Assembly: GCA_002269645.1 (NCBI GenBank)
Contig: NIVC01003906.1
Coordinates: 1 to 64,000, forward strand
DNA: 64,000 nucleotides
From: Macrostomum lignano
Lineage: Eukaryota
Direction of reading: 5' to 3'
Notes under the pieces: model-generated
The model's input: the letters and a program-made list of their open reading frames with translations, nothing else
The model's database searches: none
Told to the model about the DNA's origin: nothing
Translations under genes and position numbers: made by a program
Part shown: positions 10,490-50,693 of the stretch, piece after piece
How the letters are laid out: each line of letters opens with the position of its first letter
Numbering within the stretch: position 1 is the first letter of the stretch

Positions 10490-10530
10490 GGGTCTGTCTT
10501 AGTGTCTGTCTTAGTGTCTTAGTGTCTTAG

Positions 10531-10575
<45 letters not shown>

Positions 10576-10595
10576 CACTCACTCACACGCTCACA
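10490..10595. repeat. (TGTC)n and related microsatellite
   Basis: Direct reading. Confidence 0.9.
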
Positions 10596-10597
10596 CA

Positions 10598-10887
10598 GGG
10601 TGTACAGTCGCCTTGACATCTTATCGTCAGACATGTGCCATTCGGGGGTCTGATTCCCGATCCCACTGGAACAATTTGTGTCCTTGAGCAAGACAATTAA
10701 CTCTACATTGCTTCAGTTCACCCAGCTGTAAAATGGGTGCCAGCATTAGCTGGGGTAATTGAGGGTGTGTGTGGCGACCCCCCAGTCCTTGGACTGAACA
10801 GCCTTCAGATGCGCCGCGCAATAGCTGCGTCTGAGCTGTCGGTTGCACATCTGGCTTAATTGGTGTTGGTGTAATCAATTATTATTG
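10598..10887 (+). mobile_element. tRNA-derived SINE with a CORE-like central domain
   Basis: B-box-like GGTCTGATTCCC, then TGTCCTTGAGCAAGACAATTAACTC..TTCAGTTCACCCAGCTGTAAAATGGG (similar to the recalled MIR/CORE domain), ending in an ATT-repeat tail. Confidence 0.6.
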
Positions 10888-10888
10888 C

Positions 10889-10952
10889 TACGGAATCGAA
10901 CCACGGGTCGTGGAGCTAAAGTCAGACGTGTTGACCGCTGAGCAGCCCAGTG
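10889..10952 (-). mobile_element. tRNA-like SINE head fragment (not a functional tRNA)
   Basis: GCTCAGCGG A-box and GGTTCGATTCC B-box; no acceptor stem. Confidence 0.55.
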
Positions 10953-11299
10953 TTTAAGAGTACTCTTCGGTGTCTAAAACTATAAGCGCGAATTTAAATG
11001 CGATTCAATTTACCGAACGATTTCACTATGGTAACAAAGGACCTTCTGTTGAAAGTCCCACGCACAGTTCCAGCTGATATTACAGCATAAAATTTGATAG
11101 GTAGTCGAGCCGGCTGTATTCTCATGCAGCTCAGGAAATGGCTCTGAACTATATTTAAAAAGAACATTTTTTATTGGAGGCAGAGGGGGGTTTGTGTGCA
11201 CCCAGGCGCACTTTAAGCGACATTGTCACACAACCGGCGAGAGGCATTGCTGCCCATTCCGCCCGACTCCCCTGAGCAGGCACACAAGCGCGCGGATAC

Positions 11300-11532
11300 G
11301 TACGCAGTCATACGCACAGGCACACACTCACACAGGAGTGTAGAGCGGCCCTAACTTTATTTATCGTTAGGCATGTACACTTCACTGTGCCTTGGGGGTT
11401 GGGCCTCAAGGGCGATAATTGCACGAGCAGAGCCAAGCCGAGATTCCAATTTAGCCCCAAATTAATGTGACTGCACTTGGAATCGAGCCTGGGCCGCTGG
11501 CACATCAGAGCCCCGTGGTTGAGCACTGTATT
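11300..11532 (-). mobile_element. tRNA-derived SINE, second family, copy 1
   Basis: B-box-like GGCTCGATTCC; body motifs TCGTGC..AT, GAGG.CC.A.CCCC, AGTGTACATGC and ATGACTGC are shared with 49697-49930. Confidence 0.5.
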
Positions 11533-12254
11533 AAATTAGATTATTATGATTATAATACAATTATAATAAATTATATTGCATTTAATTTGAGACTGAATAT
11601 CCTGCACAGCGGAATTTTATGTACTTCTTTGTTTAAACAAAATCAAATTCCTAATCTGTAATTTAATGTAAATCCGGTAGTTTTTTACGCATTTTTCTGC
11701 GCTATTAGCTACTAAAAAAAAAAAGTAGCATAATAAGCGACATCTTTAGATTTTTTCGTTATTATAGTGAAAGCTTAGTCACTCGTGAGAAAGTAATTGC
11801 GCGTGTATATTTTTAATTTAATAAAAAATCAGACAATAAAGCATTGCAAACTCTATCTGAGCAACTGAAAAACAATTGCAAAACAAAATTGCGCACACGA
11901 CATCAAAATATTCATTATACGCTACTTGATACTACGTAGCCAGTAGTGTAGACAGTTCACGGCAAGCTGAAACGAAAAAATATCAAAACTGGCTCGGTGA
12001 GAGAGAGAGAGGGCCCGTATGATTTGATCGATTTTTTTAAACAAAAGACGCATTGCTTGCGGTGCAAGGCGGCGAGGCAAGAAGAAAAGCAACAGAAGAA
12101 AAAATGTGTTGTGAGCAAACAAAAGTACTAATAGTATGGTACGCTACTATAGAACATAAAATCCAAATTTAAAACGACAGATCTCTTCACAAAGAAGTTT
12201 CGTATCATCTCGAAGTCTATAAGTAATTCTGCTTCCAGGTTTTCATTTTGTGGT

Positions 12255-15232
12255 TCACTTCTCAGCGGACTCCTGAAATTATAACAAAATATTTACAGTC
12301 AGTCATCATTAGATTGAGCACTTCTACTTAAAAAATGTTCCATGAATGTAGAATTGAAAATTCAGTTTTTTTATGAGTGCTCTCTGAGAGTCAGTGGTCC
12401 TAGTACGATTCCGCAAGTTAAAAAAGTTCTGCTTTAGTTGACAAGTATTATTGTACAAGTAATACAATACTACATGCAAACTATAGTATATAATAAAATG
12501 TTCTAGTATGTATTAGTGCACCTTTACTATAATATCAATACTCCTGCACTATAGTATTAGTACACATGTACTTTAGTATCAGTGCACCTGTACTATACTA
12601 TCAGTACAACTGCACTATAGTATTATTGGACCTAGACATCCCACTACAGTATTAGTACACCTGCAGTAAAATATTACTACATCTGTATTAAGCTACCCCT
12701 CCATTCCCCCTCCCTTACCGATTCTCCCTTTTCCTCGGCCGCCTGCTCGGGCACTTCTTCCACCTGAAATTAGACGATTAATTAATCAATTTATCCATTC
12801 ACTTACGGGTGTACTTTTATTTAGCTATTGTGGCATAACATTTAATACCTTCTCAAGCTCTTGTTTCTCCTCAGCTTCATCCTCCGCGTCACCGATGCCC
12901 GTCCCAGCCTCTTCTTCTTCATCAACCTGCCCGTTTCTGAGCGCCGCCTCGCGCTCCTCTTTGCGTCGGTCGCGCAGTTTCTTCTCGTTTTCGATTGCGG
13001 CGAAAAAGTCCGCCTCCGCCTTCGCAACCAAATCCTCATGCTCCTCGTCTCTGTGCTCCTCCTCTTCCTCCTGGTGTTGGGATGAAGATATTAGTGGATT
13101 AAGAGAGAAAGTTCATCTGACCCAATGATCATGTCACTATGTGGATCAGCTGACCCACTGGTCCTGAATCTATCCCACTCTATGGGTCAGCTGACCCACT
13201 AGTCCCGAATCTATCCCATTCTATGGGTCAGCTGACCCACTGATCCTGGATCTATCCCACTCTATGAGTCAGCTGACCCACTGATCCTGGATCTATCCCA
13301 CTCTATGGGTCAGCTGACCCACTGATCCTGGATCTATCCCACTCTATGGGTCAGCTGACCCACTGATCCTGGATCTATCCCACTCTATGGGTCAGCTGAC
13401 CCACTGATCATGAATCTATCCCACTCTATGAGTCAGCTGACCCACTGATCCTGGATCTATATCACTCTATGGGTCAGCTGACCCACTGATCCCGAATCTA
13501 TCCCACTCTATGGGTCAGCTGACCCACTGATCCTGGATCTATCCCACTCTATGGGTCAGCTGACCCACTGATCATGAATCTATCCCACTCTATGAGTCAG
13601 CTGACCCACTGATCCTGGATCTATATCACTCTATGGGTCAGCTGACCCACTGATCCCGAATCTATCCCACTCTATGGGTCAGCTGACCCACTGATCCTGG
13701 ATCTATCCCACTCTATGGGTCAGCTGACCCACTGATCCCGAATCTATCCCACTCTATGGGTCAGCTGACCCACTGATCCTGGATCTATCCCACTCTATGG
13801 GTCAGCTGACCAGATTTGCATTCTTCTAATATCAGTGAAACTGTATAAAATCTTCCGAATTTCTCACTCTAGTCTGGCAGCTCATGTGATCGAAATAAAT
13901 TATTTAAAGGAAGCTAAAATTGCTTCTTTCGTGTTCTGATCCAGTAAACAGGTGAATTTGATGAATAGAAGGTTTTTCCGTGAAAATTTGTGTACAAAAA
14001 TGCGGAAACTTTGATCTACAACAAACGGCAGCCCAAGTCTTATGCTCCTAGAAGCAGAAGATTACCGGCGGAGCGGGCGTTTTGGCACTTCGAGTGCTCA
14101 ATGGTGTCTCATTGCCACTGACGCTCTGCTAGATGAAGTTGGTTTGACCATTTTATAATTCGATTTTTTTAACTTGTTAGTCTGTTATTAAACAATCCAA
14201 AATAAGTTACAAAACATGTAAACTGTACGTGTGTCGTGGCTAAGAATTTGTTCAATGCTAAGGGGATTAAGCATTCGAAATTATGTCTAACATTTCAATA
14301 TAGATTTTGCATAAACATATACGAGATTTCAGCTGACTCCCTTGAATTTCTTGCAAAGGGGTCAGTTGACCCTCCTGATTTTCACGAGTGAGGGGTCAAA
14401 TGGCGGGGTCAATTTTCACGGGAGGTCAACTGACTCCCTGATTTTTTTCTTCGTGAAAGGGGGCCAACTGACTCCCTGATTCTATCAAAGAAGGATTCAA
14501 CTGACTCCCAGATCTTATTTTCTCGAGAAGGAGGTCAACTGACTCCCTGATTTTCTTGGGGGGTCAACTGACTCCCTGATTTTCTTGGGGGGGGGGTCAA
14601 CTCACTCACTGGTTTTTTGCGGGGAGGTCAACTAACCCATTGTTTCCCGCCAACACAGGGGTCAATTGACCATACTGAATTGCTCGCGGGGTGGTCAGCT
14701 GACGTATCAATCTCCCCAAAAAACTCACCGCTCCACCTTTCTTCTCCTTCAGCTTCATCTCGCGATGCCGCGACTCCAGAATCTTCTCTCGTCGAGTTTC
14801 CCGTTCGAAAATCGCGTTCACCAGATTTCGCTCGTTCCGGTTTTGCGCGTAGAAGCCTTCGGACAGCTCCACGATGGTGGCGACTCCCGACTGGCTGCCG
14901 CAGGCCATGAGCCGGCCGTGCTCCTGCAGGCGGAGGCACTGCAGCGGCTCGTCGCAAACCTGCACAGTCAGTGTCGGGTCGTTCTGCTTGAACAGCAGGT
15001 CCCACACGTCCAGGGTGCCATCAGTTTTCGATGTGAAGAACACCCCGGGTCGGGCGGTGGACCAGCAACCGTCCGTGAGGCCGCACTGGTGATACTTGGT
15101 CCACATGATGGCGTTCTCTTTGATGTCCTCCGACCAGATGCGGGCTGTCCAGTCGCCAACTGACATGAAAACCTGCGGATGGGGGGGGGGCGGGGTTGTC
15201 TATCTCAAGCACTCGATGTCTGTGGGCAAAAT

Positions 15233-22555: not shown

Positions 22556-25490
22556 TCAATTGCTAGCATTACTGTTTGCTTGCAGCAAGGTACGGCATCG
22601 GTTCTGCAGTTTGTTAATCCTCTCAAATACTTTAACAGCTGGGCCCAGTTTCAGGCCGAGACCGGCGAGCACGTCCATTCGCTTCATCAGCATCAGAGAG
22701 GCGCCGTCTATCTCTTGATCGACAAATGCCTGAGCAGCCAGAGGGAAGCCTTCGGATAGGAGCCAGGATTTCACTTGGGCGATGGTCCACTTGCTGGCGT
22801 CGAATGGATTCGGGTCGTCTAGAAATACAGGCGACTTCCTGCTGGAGTTGGGAGAGACAAATCAAGCGAATGAAATTAGCTTTTTACCATAGAAGTTTGA
22901 ATTAGAAAACTAGATTCAATGGTCTATCTAGTTGGAAGCTTTTACCATAGACACTAGCTAGTTAAGGTGGTTTTACCAGGCATTGGCTAGCTGGGATGGA
23001 GTTTTACCATAAACACTAGCTGACTAACGTCTAGCTGGGGTGGGATTTTACCATAAACACTAGCTGACTAACGCCTAGCTGGGGTGGAGTTTTACCATAA
23101 ACACTAGCTGACTAACGTCTAGCTGGGGTGGGATTTTACCATAAACACTAGCTGACTAAAGTCTAGCTGGGGTGGGATTTTACCATAAACACTAGCTGAC
23201 TAACGTCTAGCTGGGGTGGGATTTTACCATAAACACTAGCTGACAAACGTCTAGCTGGGGTGGGATTTTACCATAGACACTGGCTGATTAACGTCTAGCT
23301 GGGGTGGGGTTTTACCATAGACCACTGGCTAGTTAAGATGATTTTACCATAGACTGGCTAGTTGGGTGGAATTTTACCATAGACACTAACTGACTAACGT
23401 CTAGCTGGGGTGGGGTTTTACCATAGACACTGGCTGACAAATCAGAGTCTGCAATATAGACTGTTGCATAAATTTATATTTAGGTCCACGGTTTCTACCA
23501 TGCGCGTTACTCACCTATTCATTGATCCGTCATCCTCGATCTTCTGACAGGCTGAGCAAATCCACTTGGCCTCGCTAGCCGGCTTCTCCGGTATCTTCGG
23601 CCGGTGGCAGCTGACGTGGTAGCCCTTGTCGCAGGCGTCACAGATAAGCATCAGCTCCGCGTCGCCTGGATCGAGGCAGACGCAGCAGGTCTTGCACTCG
23701 GAGCACTGCCAAGGCGACTGGCGGGCTCGAGAGGCCAGCTCAACTGAGTAGAGCATGCAGCTAGGATGGGCCCGGTGGCTGCAGTCGCGGCAGGTTAGCA
23801 ACTGCTCAGGGACGCCCATTCGATTAGCTCGGCCAGAGGACAAGCAAAAATCGCAGAGTTCATCGTCAGACTGCTGCTGATTAAGCTCTTGCTCAATGTC
23901 CTGCTCAGAGTCTTCATGATGTTGCTGCTGCTGCTGCTGCTGCTGGGAACGCTCTTCCAGCGAAGCAGCAGATGCTTTGGATTGTTTTCGAGTTTTCTCT
24001 TTGTTGTGCTTTGACTTGGTCGTAGCCGGCGATTCACTTGGTTGACTTTGGCGTCGCTCCTTCTGCTCGGTTGGATTTGGCGATCCGGCGGTCGCCGGCT
24101 TCTCAGCGACTACGGCGGAAGCGGCGGCTACTGCTGGGGATGCTGAGTCCCTGGCAACGCCTTTGACTCGCGAGATGACCACGGTTGGAATTGGTGGTAG
24201 GGCCTGCTGCGGTTGCTTAGTGACAGACGAAGGCTGCGATGTCGGAGAGTGCTCAGCAGACTGAGCCGCTGGCGTTGCCGTAGTGTCTGCCACAGAGACA
24301 GACGTGATGCAGTAAGCAGGTGGCGCAGTTTCACTATTAGAGGAGCAATTACTTGAGCTGGAACTGGCGGTGGAGGCTGGCTGCCGCTGCTGCTGCTGAG
24401 GCAAGCAATGGCCAACTGACAAGTCCAGCGGTTCGCTCAGGTCCGACTGAGCTGGCTCGCTCGGTCTCGGCCGCTTAGCCTGGGGCGGGTGAAGCTGCTG
24501 CGACTGCTGCTGCTTGTTGCTGTTGCTGCTGCTCTCCTTGCGCTTTTTGAGCGCCTCCTTATCGCGACGCTTCGATCCGTCCGGGTCGAGAGTGTACCGG
24601 CCGGTGGAGACGCGGCACAGTCCGCCAGTGGACGCCTCGCGTTCGAGCGCCATCTCCAGAGTTTCGCCCTGCAGAGGCTCCGCGCCTGGCGCCGAATCCT
24701 CTTCTTCAGACGTCGCCGACGGCAGGCAGCGCAGACGATCGGCCACGTCCTGAACGGTGAAGCCGGAGGCGAGCGCGTCGGGCTGATCGCTGGCCAGGCT
24801 GCCGACTGCGGCCAACAGGCGACGACTGGTGGCGCTGCTGTTCAACACGCTGCTGATGAGGGAGCCGCGGCGCCATTTTGAAGCATTCCGGTAGGACACG
24901 GAGCCTTTGTACTCGACCTTCAGCACCGAGCCGTCGTCAACTAGACGCTCGAGCAGCTGTACAATGGCCTCCCGTTGGAGACCGTGATGCCGCGTCACCA
25001 TCGAACAGATCCGATCAATATCTGGCCGGGCCTTCCGCTCGCGCAGTTTGTCAATGATGGTCAGGATCATTGTGCGGATCGGCTCATCGCCGAGAGCAGC
25101 CGCTGCAGCCGCGGCGGCTGCTGCTGCTGCGGCGGCTTTTTCCGCGGAACGCTGCTGCTGCTGCTGCTGCTGCTGCGACGGTGGCGGAGAAGACATCGTT
25201 GTGGACGTGACAATGGCGGCTGCGTGTTCGGGCAGCTGCTGAGCGGCGGCCGGATTATCCGGACGCTGTTGAACTAGCCGATCAACCGAGTGTCCGATGG
25301 AGGACTTGACCGGTGCCGGTGCATGACAGATGTTGTTGTTCTCGCCTAGGCTGGCACTGGTATTATTATTAATGGCAGCCTTTGCACCGCCGTGGTGATG
25401 ATGGAGCTGATGGTGATAGCTAGCCACCACCTGCTGCGACGACAGGAAGCCAGGCGGGATGGCCGTCTGCACTGGCAGAGCGCGGGCCAT
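22556..25490 (-). CDS. Chromatin reader: two winged-helix domains, double PHD finger and atherin/SAMD1-type SAM; join(25490..23515,22838..22556), 752 aa
   Basis: WH1 TIIDKLRERKARPDIDRIC..VLKVEYKGSVSYRN; WH2 GFTVQDVADRL..LCRVSTGRYTL; PHDs CDFC..CRDCSHRAHPSC and WQCSECKTCCVC..CDACDKGYHVSC; SAM KWTIAQV..AFVDQEIDGASLMLMKRMDVLAGLGLKLGPAVKVF. The single phase-2 intron is in frame (2259 nt). Confidence 0.85.
22935..23440. repeat. 44-bp minisatellite in the intron of the WH-PHD-SAM gene
   Basis: Unit TTTTACCATAAACACTAGCTGACTAACGTCTAGCTGGGGTGGGA. Confidence 0.95.
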
Positions 25491-26413
25491 TTGTTCTTTC
25501 CGTCTTTTTGAGAACTTTCTTTTAGGAAGCAAATTGGCTGGTATACACAACCAGACAGGCAAAAGGGAAGCAAGCTTCTTGGCGGGAGATATTTGCAACG
25601 CGCAACGCAGTCTGGGTACCGCTGCTGAGGAGAGCGACAACTTAAAAGCGCGACTGAGTGGGGGGGTGGAGGAGAGAGAGGAAGGCAGGGCCTCCGGGAA
25701 GCAAACAGGGCTTTGTGAGAGAGGAGGAAAAAAAGAGAAAAAAGCCCGACGGAATTGAGGGGGCAGACAGGGCCTTTTTTCTAGTTAAGGCAGGCAGGCA
25801 AGGCTTTATTCCGCGGATCGCGGGCGGGCGCGCTAAACTCGGGCCGGGCCGTCCGTCTTCTCTTCTTTCTGCTTGGTGGCGGGCCGCGTCGGTGCCTCCC
25901 TGCGCATAAATAGGGGCCCACCGCCACCCCCCACAGCCCCAAGCCTAAGAGAATGAGGGGTCGGAACTGGAAGCGAAGAACTGGGGGGGGGGCGGGTGAC
26001 GCGCTCACTCGGTCCAAGATCGCCCCCGCCGCTCTCCAGTCCGGCCGCCAACCCCGCCTCCCCAAACCAAAGCGGCCTCAGCCAGTGAAACGAGAGGAGA
26101 GCCCGCCGCCGCGCCGGGCCGCTCTCCAGAGCCTGTTTCGCGGGCCTTTGCCACCTTCCCACTCACCCCCCACACGCAGCAGACTAAGGCCAAGGCCCGG
26201 TCCGCTTTTGCCCGGGGGCGGCGGAGGAGTGGGGCAGGGGTTGGGCCGCGGGTTTATGGCCCTGGGGCGCGCTGGGCCGTGCCGCTGACGCGGTCTTGGC
26301 TTCTATGCTTCGCTTCGCCTCCTCTCCTAGTTCTCCCGCGCTCCTGGGGCCGTGGGGCCGCCCCGCCGCCTGCAGCCCTTCAAGGCCAAAGCCGAAAAAA
26401 ACTGGAAGAGAGC

Positions 26414-29400
26414 CCATAGTGCAGAAGGACGGGTGTACGACGGAAATTTCCGTCGTACATTGAGGTTGGTTGTCGTACATGTCGTACATCGTTCATTTTT
26501 GCAAGGGCTCTTTGTCGTACATGTCGTACCGTCGTTGGCCACACTGTCACTGTCGTACATCTCTGACTAGAAAGCTATATGCATAGGCATTTAAAAATAC
26601 AATTTCGTTTTCATAATTAAATTAAATTTATTCAAAGTTCTTTTTACGAGGCACAAATAAAATATAATCTTGGCATACTTAATAATAATTTTTTATTATG
26701 TGGCACCAAATTTCACATTTTTATATTCAAGGCCACACAAATGTGCATCCGTTGTTTTAATCTTAACCTTGTTTATTTCTTTTTTGAAATGCGTATCGTT
26801 GTATCGTGTTACTGGGAATTGAATTGTGAATGTGAATTAATTCATAATCATCTGATCTTGTAATTCTCGTCCTCCGGTCAGTCTCGTCTCTCGTGATCGT
26901 GATGTGATCTAAGATAAGATCTGATCTGACTAATGTCTTTTGTCTTATCCCTTATAACTTTTACTTTTCTATAATCTATGGCTATGCACTCTGCACTGCA
27001 CTAGCACTATATACTATACTACAAGCTACAACTAAAAGTAACTTTTAAGTTTTCTTAATTTGTTGCAAAACTTAAACTAGCAATTTGTAATTTTTCAACT
27101 TTGACAAGTAAATTTATTAGTAGTTAGTACGAGTAACAAGTTGAGTAATTAATTAAGTTGAGACTGTTGAGTTGAGTTGCATGTTGCATTGTTGCAGTTG
27201 ACTCATTGACTTTGACTGTTGACAAATGACAAGGTCAACTGTCAAGTGACACTTGTGACAGTTTGTTGTTTGAGACTTTGAGTTAGTGAAAGTGACTAGT
27301 GACTGACTGACTGGTCTGTCTGACTGACTGACTCGTGTCTCGTGTCTGTGTCTGTCTGGACATCTGGTGATTCTTTCAAGTTTATTTTTTAAACATTTTA
27401 TCACTTTTACCTTCATAAATTAGTTCTAGAACTTCTAGTGTTCTGTTCTAATTCTAGTTCTTAACTTAACTTCTTGTTCTTAATCTTAGTTGCAAGTTTT
27501 TATTTTAAAAGTTCAAGTTGTCAGTTGTGTAATTTCACAATTTCAGTAATTGAGTTGACATTAGACAAGTTTATAAAATTATCTTATCACTTTCTTTTAA
27601 TAATTAGTAATTAATTAATTAAATGCATTTTTTATTTGTCAAATTTGACTTTACTTGACAAGTTGAAGTTGACAGTTGAGTACTTGAGTATTGAGTAAAG
27701 ACATAGTAATTAAGTTGACAGCTATGGCTTATTGCTTGGCTTGAAACCAACAAATATTTCTTACGAAATAACAAGTAGAAGTAGCTAATAGCCATCTAGC
27801 CAAGAGACACCAAGTTTTGCTTCGTTTCATGAAAGAAAAGAAGTGAATATATATAAATTAGGGCCTACTGCAAGTCTGCAACTAATTTGAGACAAAACTT
27901 CAGGTGCTTGGCAGCAACTTTAGCAAATACAACTTCCAAGTTGACTTGACATTGACAAGTGTATAAATTTATCTTATTACCTTTACTTTTAGTCTTTTAG
28001 TAATTCTAAATTCATAGCAAATTTTGCTATTGTATTGTATTGTAAGTTGACTAGATTGAGTAATTGAGTTGTATAAAATTATGCAATTGATTATATTTGG
28101 TAGAGTTGAGTAGAACATTTGGTAGAGCTAGATTGTAGAATGGTACAGTATAGTATATGAAATTATTTTATAAAAAAAACAAAATATATTGAAATGTGCA
28201 TTAATTATATCCTATTACTAAATGTCTAATCTTTATTTCCTAAATTTCTATAAGTATAATTATAATTATTTATTTAATTTTTGTAAACAAAACCATATTT
28301 TTATTCAACTGATAACTAGTTTGGTTTATGCTTACTTATTGATTAGATTTGGTCATAACTAATAATACTAAATTAAATGCTGATTGCCAAAAAAATTAAC
28401 TTGTCTTTCAGCTAAATTCAGCTATTCAGCATTTGCTTTTTGATTTATTGTGCCAAAATTAATCTCTATAATGTCTCGTAGCAGTAGCACATCAAGTTCT
28501 GGCTCTGAAGAAAATCAGTCTGAGACAGAGACACCACTAGCTGCAGCTTTGCAAGCTAGTATCCAGGACCAGGCTGACCAGGCAGAGCCAGAGGCAGTAG
28601 TAGAGAAGGCGAAGGCTGCTGAGTGTGCTTGGGCCCATATGCCAATCATGCAACAGGCACAGCGGCAACGCCAACAGCAACAGGCTAATGTGCAAGTACA
28701 AGCAAAATCAAAGCGTCCACTGAGTTTGTCTCATGCAGCGTCTTCATCTGCACAAACTGAAGAGCCACCAACTAAGAAGCCTCGCGGAACTGTGTGTGAC
28801 CCACATTACTGTGTGGATTGCCTTCAGCGAGGGCTTCCACTGTCCAACTGCCGCATTTATCGAAACAATGGTAGTAGCAGAAAAACTCATCGGAGTCGCT
28901 GGCACAAAGAAGACCCAGCCAATAAGATTTTAACATATTGCAGACCTGACCATGCTGATGTTCGCGACCTAATTGCTGCCAGGCCTGCCAATGAGAATGA
29001 GAAGCAGGTAAAAAAACGCATCACAAAGGCCATGGTCAGCCATGAGGTGCTGGAGGTTGAAAGTGCCAGTGATGAAGAGTCACCTGAACGTCCTGAAGTT
29101 CCAATGACCACTGAGCCTGAGGCAGAGCAGCAGCAGTCTGAGGGACCAAAGACAAATCTGGTAGTAAACATTGAAGTACTGGAATCATCCGCCGTTGACC
29201 AAAGATCCAGCTCATTTGTTAGGCAGCTTGCTGATGCTTCACCTATCCTTCCCAGTCCTGCTGAGGCTGCATCTACAGCATCATCAAGCACGTCAGGTCG
29301 GGATCTTTTGGCAATTGTCACTGGGCTGGAAATTAAAATGGCGGAGGCAGCCCGACAACTTGCCCTACTTCCGATTATACTAAATGTTGTTCGGGACTTG

Positions 29401-32400
29401 GCGCTGTCACAGGCTACCTCCAGCTCAAACTCTCGGGGACAAAACTTACCAAAAGTGCCGCCAATTGTGGCTAGCAACATGGCCGAGCTCCTGGAGAACG
29501 AGATGCTCGCCACAGCACCTTGCGGTGAGGACACAATTTTATACTGTGTCCCGTGCTACAACGTTTTAATGGAAGGCACGGCCTTCTCGCCAAAGTTGAC
29601 TGTTGCGGAGAGGCACAGCACTTTGTAAGTCCATTGTATGTACTTTTATCTAACAGGCAATAAGACAATCCAGTTGGCCTTTTCCATTTATTTATTATAA
29701 ACTTTCATTTCTCTAACTTCTTATAGAAACCCCAAGTCGATGGGCACGCTTGCACGAGGGCAGCTCATTACAAAGCTGGAAATGACTGAGATCCTTGCGT
29801 GTGGCGAGGCATTCTCCCGGCTTCGTTATAGGATAGTGAAACATCTCTCTGGTATCGAGGCTGTCGGCCATGTGAAAGCTATGAAGAAGTATGCGGACCG
29901 CAAGATTGAAGAGAAGCGCGTCTCAGGAACTGTTCGGCGCCTTTTGCGTTGCTCTGTTGCCAATATCGAATCAGCGTCAGCTAGTAAGCACTATGAGACG
30001 TTCGTGAGCATGCTTTATCGGTCGGACGCTGAAGTTGGCCAGCGGGGCCACGGCCGGTATGTACCATATTATGTGGTTTGTATCTGTATGCCATTAGCTA
30101 AGCTATGGTTATTTTGTACGCTATTTGTTAATTTACCACCCACTATGCATCCAACTAGGGAGTTTAACAAGGAGTTGTGGTCGTTGTTTGAGGTCACCGC
30201 TGACAAGTATACGGCTGAGTTCCTGCAGACCCCACTGCCGTCCACCGGATGTCCTCCCTGCTACGCCATTGCTTGCGACAAAAGCACACCAGGTCGCATC
30301 ACTAACCAAGCTGTTATGGTGTTGGCCAGGTAAGTAGGGAGGAAGAAGGAAAAGTAATGTACATTAGGAGTATCCGCCACTTAAATATTACTTTTACTAC
30401 CTCCTTAAAACGGATAACCCCTAACAGGTGCGAGACTGGTGACGCCGTTGCTATCCCAGGTGGCGCCCCGGCCGTTTATTCCAAAGAGATGGACGGCAGC
30501 GGCCCCGTTCTGGTGCAGCGGCTTTTTCAAGGTCTGGCGAACTTTGATTTGCCCATTGATCGTCTTGTGGGCGTCATTGCCGACGGGCAATATCAAACTG
30601 CGCCTTTTAAAACGGCAATATTTGAGAAGCTGAAGGAGGCCGGAGCCGACTATGAGATCCCAATTAACTGGGACCCGGCCCACTTTATAAACCTGGCCGT
30701 GACTAACGTGCGCGATAGTGACGACGGAGAGGCGTTGCAGGATTTTATTGACAGGGCAAACCTGTTTCCGCATCTTTTTGGCCACGGGCGTGGCCGTTCG
30801 GCTTTGGAAGTAAGTATGCAACCTGAATGTCTAACTGAATAGTTTACCGAGGGTTTTAGATATACGTTTGCTATAAAACTACTCCAAATTCTTTGTTTGT
30901 AAAAAAACAGATTGCTTCCGAGGACCATGCCGGAGCAATTTCATCATTTGCCTCGCAGCGCTTTACCAGTTCAGCCATGAACCAATGGCAGACCATCTTT
31001 CGCTGCTACGGCGATCTGCATGCCGCATTTCGAGCCGAGAAACCACGAGTCAGAGATAACGACCCACAGCCGTACATAATGTTCGGATTTGATTTTGTGT
31101 GCGACTTGTTGGGCTACCTGGATCTCTTTGCGCCAATCAAGTAAGTTGATTTATATGCCTTGTGGGTAGTAAAATTACTATGGGATCAACTTTTTGATTA
31201 CCTACTTACTCCAAACACATAACACTTGCACAGAGCTCTTATGGAGATTGCGCAGAATCTTCAGCTGCCCCACTGGAAAGTGTCTACCTTATGGCCATTG
31301 GTAGCTGAGTTCCTCCATGTCCATGCAGAGCAGTTTCGTAGTGAGGACTACCCCACGCTGCATGAGCACATCGACAATCTGCACGTTGGTGGCACATTTG
31401 ATGGCGTGACTCTGCTGGACGGCTGGCTCAAAGTAAAAAAGCCGGTTGCTGGCTCTGCCTCTGACCAGGATCAGTGGCGCGCTCGAGACATGGAGGTAAG
31501 CTTGTGCAATCATTATATTATGTACTCTGCCAAAGTTACCATATTCTCCTTTGTGCTTCATTATTCAGCTCCATCCTTCTTCCTCCTTCCTCAGGACATT
31601 GCACGTGATACACAGAAGCTTGCCGGGGCACTTCACCGCAGCTTCGTTGCTCGCATTCAACGCTGCTGCGACCCGAGCACCTCTGATTGTGCCTCCTTCG
31701 ATGCAGCTGCCATCATCCGTGCCATTGCATGCAGGGACCCTGAAGTTGCAGCAGAAGAGTTTGCAGACCAGTGCGCTCCCGCCTTTAAGCGGCTTGTGAC
31801 CGAGGCAGTCAAGCATAAGCACCTGGCTCATCTGAAAGTTCCCATGGCCCGAAGGTGAGCTCCTTCACAATCAAAACTATAAATGCACTGGTACTATAAC
31901 TAGTGTGAGGCTGGAAATCACATATTTCAAGACCACTTTGCTACAGAAAAATGTAACGAAATCGAATTGTATTTAATTTTATTTTTTGTCCACTAAACTT
32001 AGGTATGCTGCGAACTTTGTGGACACTATACGCCACGTCATTTTCACGGGTGAAGGCCGCAGTAGCTGGCTGGTGCCTTCCATCAACGGGCCACTGACGG
32101 ATTTAAAAGTAGCAGCACCCACTTTGGCACGTCAGTTATTGCTGCATCTATCGGGTTCGACAGCAGGTGGTGAATTTTCATCTGTTGTGGTGGACGAAGC
32201 AGCAGTTTATGCGTCTTTCTATGCCGACCCAGACGTTTTCCAGCGAGCCGGCCCTGCAACATGTGCACTACTTGATTTTGCACTACACCGAGGTGGCACT
32301 GGTGAGTTGCAAATTCCAGTTGCTATCTACAAATTAACTAATGTCACCTTGGGCAAGTCAGTCAGATTTGATCAGAATTTCATCTACATATTTTTCCGCC

Positions 32401-32982
32401 TTTTTCTTCCAGAAGCGATTGTCGAGAGCTTCTACTCGACTATGCGGTCGCAACAGCAACAGGGAGGCCAAACCAACGACACCCTTCAGCTTCGCGCTAA
32501 GTTAGCTTGGTTGCTACCACCCATGGGCGGCGATGCATGCGAAGAATTTCTCGACGACTCTGCGAAACTTTTTTTTAAAGGCGACAAAAGCCGTGGGATT
32601 CGTCCACATTGGAGTCCGTTTTTTGCTGCCAAAACTAAGGACGCCATCGGCAAGGTGCTGCAGAGGCGCGCAGCAGCTGTTTCCCGTGTGCCATTCATCG
32701 GCCGTCGGAAGCAGAAGCCCAAAGACGGCGACAATAATGCCAATTGATAAATTCATTTAATTGAATCATTCATAATTAATATTACTTCAATTACTTGTAA
32801 ACTTGTTATTACCACTTACAACTTATTATTACTCTTTGTCTGGGTCGGGAGTATGTGGGTTTCTGCATTGTAGTTTGTCGTACAAAAAAAAATTACTTAG
32901 TTCACTTGTGTCGTACTGTCGTACAGCAGGCTAAAACTGAAATTTGCCTTCCGTCGTACACAGAAATCCTTCTGCACCATGG
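26414..32982 (+). mobile_element. Complete autonomous hAT-like DNA transposon, 6,569 bp
   Basis: TIRs CCATAGTGCAGAAGGA (26414) and TCCTTCTGCACCATGG (ending 32982) match at 15/16, plus an inner 13-bp match GTGTACGACGGAA. Perfect 8-bp TSD AAGAGAGC at 26406-26413 and 32983-32990. Eleven subterminal GTCGTAC motifs. Confidence 0.92.
28471..32747 (+). CDS. hAT-like DDE transposase, 9 exons: 28471..29624,29727..30056,30159..30329,30428..30809,30911..31140,31234..31495,31595..31854,32003..32301,32413..32747; 1140 aa
   Basis: Eight GT-AG introns, all in phase (3423 nt, no internal stop). C2H2-like finger CVDC..HRSRWH; TTF-like CVPC..KHLSGIEAVGH; catalytic candidates YAIACDKST, VIADGQY and GTEAIVESFYS; WDPAHFINLA; FASQRF. 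Confidence 0.87.
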
Positions 32983-34464
32983 AAGAGAGCGCGCTCAGCG
33001 TCACCGCCAGCCAGAGCCAGACAGAATGCTCCGGAAGAGAGTTCTCTTTCAAATCCCGCCCCAATGCGAAATAAGTCAAACAGGGATGGCAGCCTTGGAA
33101 GACAAAATAGACTTCTGATGATTGCCAAAAAATTAATTAGCTCCCCAGATTTCCTACTGATAAAAGTGGCACAGACCGACGAGTCATTGACAGGTTGAAA
33201 TCCCCGGGATTTTTCCGGGGATCGAATTCTCTTAAACTGGACTCTCCACAAGACGCCGCTTACTCTACAGTTCTCGCGGCACCACCCCTGCAACCGAAAG
33301 AGGGACCTCCGTCGATGCTCGATGCAGCCGGTCAGTCATCCACCCGAAACCCCTCTGTCTCTCTCACTCACTGCGCCAGACACTCGTTCGCCCTAATGAA
33401 TTCTCCACTGCGCCGGCTCCTATCCTCGTGCGTCAGCCCCCGCCTTGCCCGCGTTGCCTGTCTCTCGGTTGCCCTTGCCTGCCCGCCTCTCCCACCTCTT
33501 CTTTGCTCTTTCTCTTCAGTGTCGCGGCTGCTGCGGCCGCTGGCCTCGCCTGCCTAGACGCGCGCTCAACCCGGTTCTTCCTTCCTCTTCCTCTCTCTTT
33601 CTCTTTCTCTCAGCCGGCAGGCGGCCCAGCCATCGAGGGGGGGGGGAAGTTGAGCTGAGTAGCCCGAGAGCCTATATAGGTATAAGGTGGATAGGCGGGC
33701 CGTCCCCCGCCCCACCTTTTCCTCTCTTTTTTCTTGCCAGCCATGAGCCTCAAATCCGCCGATGCGAGTCGCCGGCCAGGCCGCCCCCCCCCCTGGGGTC
33801 TATTCATCTTTTCCCCTATATATCTATCTATATTGCTCATCCCTTATACCTGTATAGATTCCTCATTTTTTTCCACATCCTGCCAGCAGGAGCAGAATCT
33901 GAGCTGAGCCTATAGCTATAGCTAGTCCCTAGTCCGCGCCACTTCCCTGTTTCCTCACCCCTCTATCCTTCCCCTTCCCCTCGTCGATTCTTGATCCCCA
34001 TTTTCCCAACCGCGAGCGCGCGGGTGCGAACGGAGCGCTCACGGGGATCAAGAGGCGAGGCGAGCAATCGTTCCTATAGAAAAGTTGCAAATCTCCCATC
34101 CTAGTCCTCTACCTGCCGCCTTCCACCCACCTAATCATTCGAACACTCTGCATCCTGTTCTGCTTCTGCTCCGTTTATAAGGAATTGGGAAAGTAAATAA
34201 GGCTTCATTGCAGCAATGGCTATTTGGTTATGCGTGTCTCTACTCCATATGCGTTATGGAGATCTCTCACTTAGATCTCTGAGATGAGACTAGCTTAGCT
34301 AATCGAAAGAGGATTCCATTTCGTCAAACATGTGGCATGAAGACCCGGAAACTGACTGACTGGCTGTCTGCTTTTCTTTTATGTCTGTTTGTCCTGACAG
34401 ACAGTCAATTGCAGCTCATCTGTGGCTGGGTGTCGCTTCTCAATTTTCAAGGTCAGACATCAAA

Positions 34465-38574: not shown

Positions 38575-41500
38575 GGTCGCGCTTCACAACCCGACTAGCC
38601 CAGCCATAGAGAAGGGTTGAGGATGCGTGTGGGCCCCGCAAGGCTGGGTGGGAATCGGGAAAAGGCGGCTAGGGTTTGGGGTGGCGGATTTAGCCTCTCG
38701 GATTCCCGCACCGGTGGCTGCGGCAGCAGACGGGAGGTGACGGGGGAAGGGGGGGGGGGTTGGAGCTGCGCGGCGCGGGCCAAGCAAGCAGGCAGGCAGG
38801 CAGGCAGGCAGGCGGGCAGGCCGTCAGAATTAATGGGCCGATCGAGCAGTTGCGGACGCGGCGGCGGCGGACCCAAGCGAGAGAAAAAAAAGCGAGAGGG
38901 ACAAGTCGGGGCCGTTGGGGGCGGGGACTGGGATAGGCAGGGCAGGCTGACTGCCTGGCTGGCGGCCGAGGCGAAGGGCCGGGCAGCGGGGCGGGAATTT
39001 GGCGCGCCATCGAGATTAGAGCGAAAGACGGCTTGAGGCTTAGGGGAGGGCAGATTGGGATTCTGGGCCTGGCAGGAGAGCGCAGCGTCTGCACCCCCCC
39101 CCCTGTGCGCCTTATCCACCGACCCGACGGGCCACCCACTCCAGATCCCCTTCAACTGCCCCCGGCCCTGAGGGCTCCCACACAAAGCAGCCTCTCCTCC
39201 CGAGTCCCGCCCCACCCAGAAAGATTTTGACGCGACCGCGCATAATTTGCGACTGGCTGACTTTGCGACTGGCAGAGAAAGAGAGAAATGACTTCTCGAA
39301 GCGGCGTTGGAGAACTGAGCGCCAAATTGTCGGTCAAGTCTCATTGGTGGTGATGGAACCCCGTTTCAATTTGACAAGCTCATGGCCTTTTCTCGCCTTA
39401 GCAAATCATTTATTGGTAAATTTCGAACGATTCTCCAGCGAGACGATCTGTGGTGACGTGTTCAAGTTTAATAGGCTGGCAACGCGCTTCGAGTGTTTTT
39501 TTTTGGGTGTATTAATTTAACTTCTGCTTACACACGGTGGCCTCCGAGTCCCAGAGCAGTGAGGAGGCCTGGAGACGGTGGGGTAGGGGGAAGATCAGAT
39601 CAGGCCCAGCGGGGGATGAGGGAGGATGGGATTGAGAGCGGATCTCCAAGGCCAGTGGGTCGAGTGTCTGCCTGTGTGGCGGGAGGGTTGGCGGCAGCAG
39701 CTGCTGCATGCGGGCTTCCGAGCGGGCGCGGCCGACTCTGCGGGGAGCAGCTGCGAAGCCCCGGCCACCGGCCCGACCTCTCGCAGTCGCTGAAGCAGCA
39801 AAGCATGGCAAAACCGGCAGTGACTGACTGACTGGCTGTAGGGGAAGGGGGCTGGCTAGATGGATTGGCGGCTCGAGTCCGTTGGCCACTCGCTGCGCAG
39901 AAACGAGCGCTCGCGACTGGCGCGCACACACCACAAGCAATGGTTTGCTTTAGCTCTAGCTAATCCGCAGCCCGGCCGCGCTTCTGGCTCAATTCATTCA
40001 TTCAACCTGTGATGTGGCGAGTGGCGAGCGAGCTAGCATGAGTGTGTGTGTGCGTGTGTGTGAGCGAGCGCCTGTGTCTGGCAGGCAGCCCTGCTAAGCC
40101 CCACGGCAGACGCAGAAGAAAGAAAGAAGGAAATAAACGGAAGGCAAGGCGGGACGCCGGAGAACAAGAAACGGCCGGAGCCGCGAGCTCTGGAGAGAGA
40201 GAGAGAGGATGACGCAGTCCCTCAGTCTGTCCTGCAGCTCCCTGCCCCAGCCTCCGCCTCATCACTAATTTATGGCAGCGGGTCTCAACGCGCTCAGCGA
40301 CTCGAACAGAGAGAGAGAGAGATCTAGAGGGGGAGAGAGAGGGCGGAAACTCAATCAATCCCGCCTCTGCCGCCGCTACTGAAGTCAGCGCGCAATCTTC
40401 TGACTTCCTCGCTCTCTTTTTCCCCTTTCATTGTTCCCAAATCTTTGCATGTCTGTTGGTTACTCTGTTTCTGGCAGAGAGAGAGAGAAATGTGTAAAAG
40501 CGATCGGATTTAGCAAAATGCCTAGTGTGAATCGCTCTCACTTGCAATATAGGAGAGGATTGAACGGCCAGAATTTACTCAGAGTAAGGCAAGCCCCAGG
40601 TTAAAGAGGAAAGGAGACACGCAAGCAGCTGCGCTTTGGTTTCGGCCTGCCCAATCTGCTCTCCTTAGTAGCTAAGCTATCCCTTCCTCTTCCGCACCAA
40701 GTAGCGCGCGCGCGTGGCCGCGGCCGGTCGCATCCCAGCGAGTCTCTGCAGCCTCCTTCCTCATCTAAAACATGCCCCCAATCTGCGCTCCCCCCGAGCG
40801 CTTTGTAAATCCCCTCTGCGTCTCAGCTCTGAGGAGAGAAGGCTTGAGGACGAACCCGTTGTTGGGCCAGGAGAAGTCTTCCTCTTCGTTCCCTATATTT
40901 TTTATCCCGCGGCAGCGGCAACGGCAGCGGCGGCGGCTGCGGCCACGGCGGGGTCGGCATGCGGGCCAGAGTCTCTTCTTCTCCATCATCTCGCCAGGGG
41001 GCGGGTGGATGGATGGGCCCCGCTTGCATATAGCCAGGGGTGACGGTTGCGGCGAAAGTAGGGACGGGGAGAAAAGAGAAGAGCACAAGAGAGAAGGCAT
41101 GGAGCGAGAGAGCCAGAGGGAGGAGGCAGGCAGGCAGGCAGCGAGGCAATTTTCAAGGAAGTGGAAGCGCGCCGAAAGACAGACAGGCCGCGAAAGGGGG
41201 GCGGGCGGGCGGCAGGGGAAACGCGACAGGACAGCAGCGGCAGCGGCAGCAGCAGTCGGTGAGAGGGGCAGGCGGGCAAGCAAGCAAAAGTAAAGAGAGC
41301 GCCAGTGCCGTGAGGCATGCAGCACAGCGGGAGGCAGGATATAGGAGCAATTGACCCGCGCAGACGCAATAGGGACTGGGGGGCTGCGAGAGCGCATCGC
41401 ATGCGGCCGAGAGGAGGCCGACCACTTCTTCTGCAAGGCCAAGTGGATTCTTTAGGGCGCGCGAGCGGGCGGGAGAGCGAGAGAGGAAGAGGAGAGGAGA

Positions 41501-41710
41501 GTGGCAGGAGACAGTCGCCCCCCCCCCGCTTCGGTGTGTGAGCACTCCGCTCTATGCCTATGCCTACTGTCTGCGTGTGCCGTGTGCTCTGCCGTTTGAT
41601 GACGTCGTTCAAAAATTGCAGAAACCCATTATTATTGAAATTTTTACTTTGATTTTTGTAAACCAGCGAATGTCTGTGCTATCAGTTACTTTCCTTTTTT
41701 AGTAGTATAG

Positions 41711-42425
41711 ACCAGTTCATTGATAGATTGATAACCTCACCAGTTCATTGATAGATTGATAACCTCACCAGTTCATTGATAGATTGATAACCTCACCAGT
41801 TCATTGATAGATTGATAACCTCACCAGTTCATTGATAAATTGATAACCTCACCAGTTCATTGATAGATTGATAACCTCACCAGTTCATTGATAGATTGAT
41901 AACCTCACCAGTTCATTGATAGATTGATAACCTAACCGGTTCATTAATAGGTTGATAACCTAATCAGTTCATTGATAGATTGATAACCTCACCAGTTCAT
42001 TGATAGATTGATAACCTCACCAGTTCATTGATAGATTTATAACCTAAACAGTTCATTGATAGATTGATAACCTAAACAGTTCATTGATAGATTGATAACC
42101 TAAACAGTTCATTGATAGATTGATAACCTCATCAGTTCATTGATAGATTGATAACCTAAACAGTTCATTGATAGATTGATAACCTAAACAGTTCATTGAT
42201 AGATTGATAACCTCACCAGTTCATTGATAGATTGATAACCTCACCAGTTCATTGATAGATTGATAACCTAAACAGTTCATTGATAGATTGATAACCTAAA
42301 CAGTTCATTGATAGATTGATAACCTAAACAGTTCATTGATAGATTGATAACCTAAACAGTTCATTGATAGATTGATAACCTAAACAGTTCATTGATAGAT
42401 TGATAACCTCATCAGTTCATTGATT
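41711..42425. repeat. 28-bp minisatellite, about 25 copies
   Basis: Unit ACCAGTTCATTGATAGATTGATAACCTC; variant blocks with CTAAA. Confidence 0.95.
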
Positions 42426-42643: not shown

Positions 42644-47729
<5,086 letters not shown>

Positions 47730-50537: not shown

Positions 50538-50588
<51 letters not shown>

Positions 50589-50589
50589 G

Positions 50590-50632
<43 letters not shown>

Positions 50633-50633
50633 G

Positions 50634-50682
<49 letters not shown>

Positions 50683-50693
50683 TTAACTCACTG

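What the first reader, a model, noticed from the sequence alone, without database searches (positions are those of the whole stretch)
26406..32990. Intact, probably recently active DNA transposon whose 1140-aa transposase is split by eight introns
Seen: both TIRs, a perfect 8-bp TSD (AAGAGAGC) and a stop-free 3423-nt CDS after removing eight canonical ~100-150-nt introns. The ORF track shows only fragments, so automated annotation could call it a host gene. Known: an 8-bp TSD with D-D-E, (C/D)xxH and TTF-like finger fits the hAT superfamily. Inference: an autonomous, young element whose intron-rich structure could allow splicing control of transposition, as in the P element. Unlike host introns here, these introns carry no satellites.
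Basis: partly seen in the sequence, partly recalled or inferred. Interest (0 to 1): 0.8.

Follow-up and report, generated by a model that had tools for sequence, protein, structure and literature searches.

The report
Young hAT-like DNA transposon in flatworm
This is an intact 6.6-kb cut-and-paste "jumping gene" of the flatworm Macrostomum lignano, present as at least four letter-for-letter identical copies at different genomic sites, so it probably moved very recently; databases list its protein only as a hypothetical host protein.

Summary
There is a perfect 8-bp duplication (AAGAGAGC), 16-bp terminal inverted repeats (15/16) and a 3,423-nt reading frame after removal of eight GT-AG introns. 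The window is M. lignano contig NIVC01003906.1. The 1,140-aa model equals the RNA-seq-derived GenBank protein PAA45963.1.

The assembly holds four full-length 6,569-bp copies with no differences between them. Each sits in unrelated DNA with its own perfect 8-bp duplication. It is therefore a real, transcribed, very young transposon and not a domesticated gene.

No Pfam or PDB sequence model recognises the protein or 31 homologues. A confident AlphaFold model (pLDDT 92) matches only the Hermes hAT transposase as top hits (12 of 12, E about 1e-5). Invariant D535, D604, W-D-x-x-H and E1034 lie on a split RNase H fold.

Three diverged relatives share 8-bp duplications and CCA termini. The family has 584 cluster representatives, from a flatworm, an amphipod, a jellyfish and a tunicate among others.

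It is best read as a new, probably active member of a divergent hAT-like lineage. Splicing control remains untested speculation.

The parts
26406..26413 (.). Left copy of the 8-bp target-site duplication, AAGAGAGC
   Evidence: Identical to 32983-32990. The other three copies carry different 8-bp duplications.
26414..26429 (+). Left terminal inverted repeat, CCATAGTGCAGAAGGA
   Evidence: Matches the right end at 15 of 16 positions. Only two matches in the window, 0.05 expected.
26434..26559 (.). Left subterminal region with seven copies of GTCGTAC (one inverted, six direct); putative transposase-binding sites
   Evidence: The 8-mer GTCGTACA occurs ten times in the window against 0.6 expected, and nine of those lie within about 150 bp of the element ends.
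26560..28470 (+). 5' non-coding part of about 1.9 kb. It is AT-rich and cryptically simple, and presumably holds the promoter and 5' UTR.
   Evidence: No ORF of 90 aa or more, no tandem array, GC about 0.40. The assigned function is inferred.
28471..29624 (+). Exon 1 (aa 1-385). It holds a low-complexity N-terminus, a basic patch, zinc finger C114-x2-C117...H140-x4-H145, and the CxxC (C359, C362) of the second finger.
29625..29726 (+). Intron 1 (102 nt, GT-AG, phase 2). Retention gives an immediate stop.
29727..30056 (+). Exon 2. It carries H424 and H433, which complete the TTF-like finger.
30057..30158 (+). Intron 2 (102 nt, GT-AG, phase 2). It is in frame and stop-free. Its position and phase are shared with the L007 relative. 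It is retained in UniProt model A0A1I8FS65.
30159..30329 (+). Exon 3. It carries the first catalytic aspartate, D535 (codon 30277-30279), in the motif DKST..R.TNQ.
   Evidence: In the AlphaFold model this lies on strand beta1.
30330..30427 (+). Intron 3 (98 nt, GT-AG, phase 2). Position and phase are shared with L007.
30428..30809 (+). Exon 4. It carries the second catalytic aspartate, D604 (30582-30584, motif DGQY), and W633-D634-x-x-H637 (30669-30683).
30810..30910 (+). Intron 4 (101 nt, GT-AG, phase 0)
30911..31140 (+). Exon 5 (start of the all-alpha insertion domain)
31141..31233 (+). Intron 5 (93 nt, GT-AG, phase 2)
31234..31495 (+). Exon 6 (insertion domain)
31496..31594 (+). Intron 6 (99 nt, GT-AG, phase 0). 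It is in frame and stop-free.
31595..31854 (+). Exon 7 (insertion domain)
31855..32002 (+). Intron 7 (148 nt, GT-AG, phase 2)
32003..32301 (+). Exon 8 (end of the insertion domain). It ends with the first base of the E1030 codon.
32302..32412 (+). Intron 8 (111 nt, GT-AG, phase 1). It is in frame and stop-free, and it splits the E1030 codon four codons before the putative catalytic E1034. Position and phase are shared with L007, where the donor is GC.
32413..32747 (+). Exon 9. It carries the motif G-T-E-A-I-V-E-S-F-Y-S with putative catalytic E1034 (32424-32426), the C-terminal helices and the stop codon.
32877..32960 (.). Right subterminal region with four copies of GTCGTAC (element positions 6464, 6497, 6505 and 6540)
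32967..32982 (-). Right terminal inverted repeat (reverse complement CCATGGTGCAGAAGGA)
32983..32990 (.). Right copy of the 8-bp target-site duplication, AAGAGAGC

Best explanation
Window 26414-32982 is one of at least four identical copies of an autonomous class II (cut-and-paste) DNA transposon of Macrostomum lignano. It belongs to a divergent hAT-like lineage.

Shown here:
- It has 16-bp terminal inverted repeats and an 8-bp target-site duplication.
- Eleven GTCGTAC repeats are confined to the two ends.
- A single nine-exon gene encodes a 1,140-aa protein. The public RNA-seq-based annotation splices it exactly this way.
- The protein has two conserved zinc-binding patterns, followed by an RNase H-like core. 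D535 lies on beta1 and D604 at the end of beta4, and W-D-x-x-H follows beta5. A roughly 390-aa, mostly helical insertion comes next, and then a helix that carries E1034.
- The only close structural match is the Hermes hAT transposase.

Inferred mechanism, by analogy with Hermes:
- The N-terminal finger(s) bind the subterminal GTCGTAC repeats.
- Transposase multimers pair the two ends.
- The DDE site nicks each end and releases the element through a hairpin on the flanking DNA.
- The free 3'-OH ends attack the target 8 bp apart, and repair of the gaps gives the 8-bp duplication.

Zero differences among four copies at unrelated sites imply transposition very recently. The element is likely still able to move.
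For: Ends and reading frame.

Identity to GenBank PAA45963.1, PAA49331.1, PAA83209.1 and PAA93563.1 on four contigs.

Copies: four copies of 6,569 bp with 0 mismatches carry the duplications AAGAGAGC, CAGCCCAT, ATTAGGCC and GCACAGGT. Their neighbouring genes differ.

Transcription and splicing: the GenBank annotation comes from StringTie/TACO transcripts built on RNA-seq, with TransDecoder ORFs (PMC5730564).

Subterminal repeats.

Family size and motifs: there are 584 representatives at E<=1e-3 and 225 at E<=1e-10. D535, D604, W633, D634, H637, E1030 and E1034 are conserved wherever the region is covered.

Structure: the AlphaFold2 model has pLDDT 92.4 and pTM 0.89, with RNase H strand order and a helical insertion. 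In the Foldseek PDB search the top 12 hits are all Hermes (E 9e-6 to 4e-4, probability 1.00, TM-score on the target 0.38-0.56, 478-702 aligned columns). The next hit is ISCth4 at E about 1e-2, and no P-element, piggyBac or Transib transposase appears in the top 50.

Relatives: three diverged relatives have the same architecture. L007 has TIR CCATAGTCAGGAAGGTGGCA and duplication GACATCAA. L005 has CCAGGATGGAATTCTTGC and TGGCCATC, plus its own subterminal repeats. L008 has CCAGGGTGCATTCCATGT and CATGTTTG.
Against: - No Pfam hAT model (hATC dimerisation domain, DUF4371, DUF659, zf-BED) hits the protein or any of 31 homologues, even at permissive thresholds.
- Neither a single-sequence nor a profile search of PDB sequences finds Hermes.
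- TM-scores to Hermes are moderate, at most 0.56.
- The seven duplications seen fit neither the Ac-type nTnnnnAn nor the Buster-type nnnTAnnn consensus.
- The element (6.6 kb) and the transposase (1,140 aa) are larger than the 2.5-5 kb usual for hAT (PMC3942097).
- Perfect identity of the copies could be slightly inflated by assembly polishing.
- No empty site, excision footprint or line polymorphism could be examined, so present-day activity is inferred and not shown.
Confidence: 0.8

Rival explanations
1. It is a genuine young DNA transposon, but of another superfamily that also makes 8-bp duplications (Novosib, P, Mutator-like or Zisupton/KDZ), or of an unnamed sister superfamily. On this reading the Hermes resemblance reflects only the common split RNase H fold.
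For: All Pfam hAT models are silent. The duplications lack the hAT sub-family consensus. Several superfamilies, Novosib among them, have no Pfam model, so a Pfam search cannot exclude them (PMC5751038). The element escaped a Repbase-based repeat classification in 2017.
Against: The fold search gives Hermes alone as significant, over 478-702 aligned columns, which is far more than an RNase H core. No P-element transposase or Transib appears in the top 50, and RAG1 reaches only E 0.27. The IS256-type transposase ISCth4 matches only weakly, at E about 1e-2. Pfam models for P, MULE and KDZ transposases exist and also do not hit. The D-to-D spacing of 69 residues, the (D)xxH right after beta5, the E-S-x-Y-S...R motif and the TTF-like finger all parallel hAT (the comparison with hAT motifs is from my own knowledge).
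Confidence: 0.14
2. The four identical copies are segmental or assembly duplications, or a once-active element that is now silenced. It would then be intact-looking but no longer mobile, for example repressed by piRNAs.
For: The DV1 assembly has 180-312 Mb of redundant sequence. Polishing can homogenise repeats. Only four copies were found. No polymorphism data could be examined.
Against: The duplications and flanks differ at all four sites, and so do the neighbouring genes. This excludes segmental duplication. Each site shows a perfect 8-bp duplication. The gene is transcribed and correctly spliced according to the annotation pipeline. There are 0 differences in 26,276 aligned bases.
Confidence: 0.05
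3. It is a domesticated, transposase-derived host gene that merely lies between chance repeats.
For: GenBank and UniProt treat it as an ordinary protein-coding gene. It has many introns, as a host gene would.
Against: The inverted-repeat and duplication pattern recurs at four unrelated loci with different duplications. The whole 6.6 kb, including 2 kb of non-coding DNA, is identical between loci. Diverged relatives also carry inverted repeats and 8-bp duplications.
Confidence: 0.01

Closest known systems
Hermes (Musca domestica) and the hAT superfamily in general (Ac, hobo, Tol2, TcBuster, Tip100/BuT2)
   Same: - It makes 8-bp target-site duplications and has short inverted repeats (16-20 bp).
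- Short motifs are repeated in the subterminal regions.
- It carries a single transposase gene.
- The N-terminal zinc finger is of C2H2/BED pattern.
- The RNase H-like DDE core is split by a large helical insertion.
- The (C/D)xxH motif follows the second aspartate.
- Hermes is the only strong structural match.
- Introns in the transposase gene are also known in hAT; BuT2, for example, has five exons (PMC3942097).
   Different: - No Pfam hAT domain is detectable.
- The motif is WDxxH rather than CxxH, and the first aspartate sits in DKST.
- The transposase is about twice the usual length, and the element is 6.6 kb against the usual 2.5-5 kb.
- Termini begin with CCA in all four lineages.
- The duplications show no nTnnnnAn or nnnTAnnn bias (n=7).
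- It has eight introns.
P element / THAP9 (P superfamily)
   Same: It makes 8-bp duplications. The transposase gene contains introns.
   Different: There is no THAP domain, and no Pfam P-transposase model hits. The P transposase structure is absent from the top 50 fold matches. The inverted repeats are 16 bp, not 31 bp. I saw no evidence of tissue-specific splicing.
Novosib superfamily (Repbase)
   Same: It makes 8-bp duplications. No Pfam model exists for it, and the group is poorly characterised (PMC5751038).
   Different: No Novosib sequence was available for comparison. An RNase H core for Novosib was itself not confirmed by others. The element here has a clear Hermes-like fold.

Membership tests
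hAT superfamily | 8-bp target-site duplication | tested here: met
   Four identical copies carry four different perfect 8-bp duplications. Three diverged relatives also have 8-bp duplications. The definition is from PMC3942097.
hAT superfamily | Short terminal inverted repeats (10-25 bp) | tested here: met
   16 bp, matching at 15 of 16 positions. Relatives have 18-20 bp.
hAT superfamily | DDE RNase H-like core with a large all-alpha insertion domain before the E-bearing helix, and a (C/D)xxH motif after the second D | tested here: met
   D535, D604, W-D634-x-x-H637 and E1034 are conserved. The AlphaFold secondary-structure order is beta1-3, alpha, beta4, alpha, beta5, helical insertion, then the E helix. 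Hermes takes the top 12 fold hits. Superposition of the catalytic residues could not be inspected.
hAT superfamily | C-terminal hATC dimerisation domain (Pfam PF05699) | tested here: inconclusive
   There is no Pfam hit in the query or in 31 homologues. However, the Foldseek alignments to Hermes span 478-702 columns, and the motif E-S-x-Y-S...R resembles the hAT E-R-x-F-S...R. That resemblance is recalled from memory and was not tested with a model.
hAT superfamily | N-terminal BED-type zinc finger | tested here: inconclusive
   C-x2-C...H-x4-H is invariant in six sequences and preceded by a basic patch. Pfam zf-BED does not hit. The AlphaFold model of this segment is poor (pLDDT 67), and its fold search gave nothing.
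hAT superfamily | Excision through a hairpin on the flanking DNA, leaving characteristic footprints | not testable with these tools
   This needs empty or excised sites, or a biochemical assay.
hAT: Ac family or Buster family | Target-site consensus nTnnnnAn (Ac) or nnnTAnnn (Buster) | tested here: not met
   The seven duplications are AAGAGAGC, CAGCCCAT, ATTAGGCC, GCACAGGT, TGGCCATC, GACATCAA and CATGTTTG. T at position 2 occurs in 1 of 7 and A at position 7 in 2 of 7, and none has a central TA. The sample is small. The consensus sequences are recalled from Arensburger et al. 2011, as cited.
P superfamily | THAP DNA-binding domain and P-type transposase domains (Pfam Tnp_P_element and related models) | tested here: not met
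   No Pfam hits. No P transposase among the top 50 fold matches.
Mutator-like (MULE) | MULE / Transposase_mut domain, usually with 9-10-bp duplications and long inverted repeats | tested here: not met
   No Pfam hit. The duplication is 8 bp and the inverted repeats are 16 bp. The IS256-type structure ISCth4 matches only weakly, at E about 1e-2.
Zisupton / KDZ | KDZ transposase domain with CxC cysteine clusters | tested here: not met
   No Pfam hit of any kind. That Pfam holds KDZ models is from my own knowledge.
Novosib | Sequence similarity to Novosib transposases (8-bp duplication) | not testable with these tools
   No Repbase sequences were on hand. The 8-bp duplication is shared. See for the weak definition of this group.

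The most novel reading that the evidence does not exclude
The element would be the first recognised, currently mobile representative of a deep-branching hAT-like clade, or of a sister superfamily. The clade's marks would be CCA termini, DKST/DGQY/WDxxH/ExxxES motifs and transposases of roughly 1,100 aa. It has escaped Pfam, and probably Repbase-based classification, yet it is spread across marine invertebrates.

Its own spliceosomal introns turn over quickly. Three of the eight are shared with a relative that is about 45% identical, and none with other lineages. One conserved intron sits exactly at the catalytic-glutamate helix, where retention could produce a catalytically dead, repressor-type isoform.
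Probability: 0.3. Interest if true: 0.55.

Novelty: new member of a known kind. Interest (0 to 1): 0.42.

Why it matters
Macrostomum lignano is the flatworm model in which stable transgenesis is available. Minos did not mediate integration there, and piggyBac is only at proof of principle (PMC5730564; PMC8717057).

An endogenous element that is intact and transcribed, and whose copies are still identical, matters in two ways. It could become a species-adapted vector or insertional mutagen. It could also be an unnoticed source of new mutations in laboratory lines.

The family is invisible to Pfam, and databases name its members as ordinary host proteins ("hypothetical", "HECT/SET/SWIM domain-containing"). 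Hundreds of such transposases in invertebrate genomes are therefore probably mis-annotated as genes. The profile and motifs defined here would let them be flagged.

The partly conserved, partly lineage-specific introns also offer a small natural system for studying intron gain and loss inside a mobile element.

Tried and rejected
- **Pfam.** Scans of the query, of ten long homologues and of all 32 members of alignment A1 found no transposase family.
- **PDB by sequence.** Neither the single sequence nor the profile found anything meaningful.
- **Word-indexed protein search.** It returned only the element's own gene models, both with the single sequence and with the alignment. Low-complexity words probably swamped the candidate list.
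- **Empty-site test through the neighbouring host gene.** A homology search with its winged-helix region returned no M. lignano protein. No allelic or homeologous empty site could therefore be examined.
- **N-terminal finger.** The AlphaFold model was poor (pLDDT 67) and its fold search was empty.
- **DUF4371-like ORF next to the L008 element.** An hhalign comparison of the family profile with this weak ORF showed no relation.
- **Hyalella locus L006.** No inverted-repeat and duplication pair was found within 6 kb of the gene.
- **UniProt names.** The SET, HECT and SWIM names of the same protein have no support in the Pfam scan, so I disregarded them.
- **Domesticated-gene and segmental-duplication readings.** Both are rejected.
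- **Literature.** I found no description of this element or of active DNA transposons in M. lignano.


Full report
**What is in the sequence**

The finding is correct as described. AAGAGAGC occurs at 26406-26413 and again at 32983-32990. Immediately inside these lie CCATAGTGCAGAAGGA (26414-26429) and its inverted partner (32967-32982), matching at 15 of 16 positions. The 16-mer occurs nowhere else in the window, against 0.05 chance matches expected.

After a short gap a second inverted block, TGTACGACGGAA, follows at both ends. The heptamer GTCGTAC occurs eleven times within about 150 bp of the ends. The related hexamer occurs only once more in the remaining 6.3 kb.

From the ATG at 28471, nine exons joined across eight GT-AG introns of 93-148 nt (GC 0.29-0.39) give a 3,423-nt ORF of 1,140 aa. 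Tandem Repeats Finder reports no array inside the element, although the window holds 47 tandem-repeat rows. One of these is a 44-bp satellite in the intron of the adjacent host gene.

**Where it comes from, and whether the gene model is real**

The window is positions 1-64000 of contig NIVC01003906.1 of the Macrostomum lignano Mlig_3_7 assembly. My translation is identical to a GenBank protein with four accessions (PAA45963.1, PAA49331.1, PAA83209.1 and PAA93563.1).

That annotation was built from RNA-seq-derived StringTie/TACO transcripts with TransDecoder ORFs. Two things follow by inference:
- An assembled transcript exists with exactly these eight junctions.
- The element was not recognised as a repeat by the Repbase-based pipeline of 2017.

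UniProt models from the older assembly differ only by retaining intron 2 (1,174 aa) or skipping an exon. These are gene models, not evidence of isoforms.

**Mobility**

The exact-protein look-up returned four loci. In each, the element is 6,569 bp long, and all pairwise comparisons show zero differences. The flanks are unrelated, and each copy has its own perfect 8-bp duplication: AAGAGAGC, CAGCCCAT, ATTAGGCC and GCACAGGT. The neighbouring genes also differ: a SAMD1/PHD gene, a C2H2 gene plus CD36, and a CCCH gene plus Rho-GDI.

This excludes both a domesticated single-copy gene and segmental duplication. It shows four independent integrations, each duplicating 8 bp.

There are no substitutions in 26,276 bases. 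This bounds the age at roughly 1e4-1e5 generations if one assumes 1e-8 to 1e-9 substitutions per base per generation. That range is my assumption and has not been measured for this species. Assembly polishing could hide a few differences.

**What kind of transposon**

Sequence-profile methods are silent. There is no Pfam family for the protein or for 31 homologues, and no PDB sequence match.

An exhaustive HMMER search nevertheless finds a large family, with 584 cluster representatives at E<=1e-3 and 225 at E<=1e-10. Members include several other M. lignano lineages, the amphipod Hyalella azteca, the jellyfish Sanderia malayensis and the tunicate Styela clava.

The alignment shows these conserved features:
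- LPSTG.PPH....DKST..R.TNQ, containing D535.
- G...DGQY, containing D604.
- WD..H, covering residues 633-637.
- G.EA..ES.YS.M......Q....L..R, containing E1030 and E1034.

An N-terminal C-x2-C...H-x4-H finger behind a basic patch is invariant in the six sequences that cover it.

With a 150-sequence alignment, AlphaFold2 gives a confident model of residues 335-1140 (pLDDT 92.4, pTM 0.89). Its order of elements is that of a split RNase H fold:
- D535 lies on the first strand.
- D604 lies at the end of the fourth strand.
- WDxxH lies at the start of the helix after the fifth strand.
- A long, mostly helical insertion follows.
- The last element is a helix that carries E1030 and E1034.

Foldseek against the PDB returns the Hermes hAT transposase for all twelve significant hits (E 9e-6 to 4e-4, probability 1.00, TM-score on the target up to 0.56, 478-702 aligned columns). 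The IS256-type ISCth4 follows at E about 1e-2 and RAG1 at 0.27. No P-element, piggyBac or Transib transposase is in the top 50.

The hAT-like assignment rests on the 8-bp duplication, the short inverted repeats, the subterminal repeats and this fold match. It does not rest on sequence profiles, and I give hAT membership in the broad sense about 0.75-0.8.

**Family traits from relatives**

I located the ends of three diverged relatives:

| Locus | Source | Element coordinates | Inverted repeat | Duplication |
|---|---|---|---|---|
| L007 | M. lignano, about 45% protein identity | 7421-13438 | CCATAGTCAGGAAGGTGGCA, 20/20 | GACATCAA |
| L005 | M. lignano | 4464-10832 | CCAGGATGGAATTCTTGC, 18/18 | TGGCCATC |
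| L008 | ENA assembly | 5656-11815 | CCAGGGTGCATTCCATGT | CATGTTTG |

L005 also has its own GTGCGCGC subterminal repeats. All three therefore share CCA termini, 8-bp duplications and a size of about 6 kb. The seven duplications fit neither the Ac-type nor the Buster-type target consensus, although the sample is small.

**Introns**

Introns 2, 3 and 8 occupy the same codon position and phase in L007. There, intron 8 has a GC-AG donor. The other five are not shared. The cores of L005 and L008 have no introns, and the Hyalella homologue has introns at unrelated positions. The introns are therefore partly old within this sub-lineage and otherwise lineage-specific.

Retention of introns 1, 3, 4, 5 or 7 gives a premature stop. 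Introns 2, 6 and 8 are in frame and stop-free. Intron 8 splits the E1030 codon, four codons before the putative catalytic E1034.

This makes a P-element-style inactive isoform conceivable. Nothing I could run tests that idea, so it stays a speculation.

**Comparison with what is known, and verdict**

The element works like a hAT element, and Hermes is its only close structural relative. It differs from described hAT elements in these respects:
- It escapes every Pfam hAT model.
- It has WDxxH and DKST motifs.
- Its transposase is about twice the usual size.
- Its termini begin with CCA.
- It shows no target consensus.
- It has eight introns.

Novosib, which is poorly defined and also makes 8-bp duplications, could not be tested. 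I found no paper describing this element or any active DNA transposon in M. lignano.

I rate it a new member of a known kind. It is of moderate interest, mainly because it looks currently mobile in a transgenesis model and because it exposes a widely mis-annotated transposase family.

Noticed in passing
L001, L002 and L003 (window copy: host gene start codon at 25490, element left end at 26414): Three of the four identical copies lie 924, 770 and 735 bp upstream of the start codon of a host gene in head-to-head orientation. This may reflect a preference for promoter-proximal DNA, as is known for some hAT and P elements. The sample is too small to test.
   Followed up: partly
window 42644-45655 (-), with neighbouring ORFs at 45889-47579 (-) and 40765-41612 (-): A 1,003-aa ORF carries reverse transcriptase (RVT_1) and RNase H domains, so it is a retrotransposon pol gene. 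Its ends and state of preservation were not examined.
   Followed up: partly
window 22556-25490 (-): This is a two-exon host gene of 752 aa with a SAMD1-type winged helix and PHD fingers. Its single 676-nt intron (22839-23514) is largely filled by a 44-bp satellite (22987-23319).
   Followed up: partly
window 26560-28470: The 1.9-kb 5' non-coding part of the element is AT-rich, 'cryptically simple' DNA. Many short words are repeated two or three times, and there is a loose periodicity of about 390 bp. No formal tandem array is reported. The relatives L007 and L005 have only about 0.6 and 1.5 kb in this position.
   Followed up: no
L007 12426-12585: The relative's intron at the catalytic-glutamate codon uses a GC-AG donor. 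At 160 nt it would shift the frame if retained. The annotated product of that copy (729 aa) stops well before the homologous coding sequence ends, near 12893.
   Followed up: partly
UniProt entries A0A1I8FS65, A0A1I8FTV9, A0A1I8H6T0 and A0A1I8IA18 (the same protein as window 28471-32747): Database names for this transposase ('SET', 'SWIM-type' and 'HECT domain-containing protein') have no support in a Pfam scan. One model (1,572 aa) fuses it to the neighbouring CCCH zinc-finger gene.
   Followed up: partly
window, whole length (for example 13135-13811, 41711-42424, 50513-51511 and 61363-62894): The window is extremely rich in satellites and microsatellites, with 47 Tandem Repeats Finder rows. 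This agrees with the 15% simple and tandem repeats reported for this genome.
   Followed up: no
cluster of P0014 (ENA contigs up to 3.5 Mb): A homologue cluster has 16 members at 90% identity or more, spread over many contigs of an unidentified eukaryotic assembly. This suggests that the family is multi-copy, and perhaps recently active, in at least one other species.
   Followed up: no
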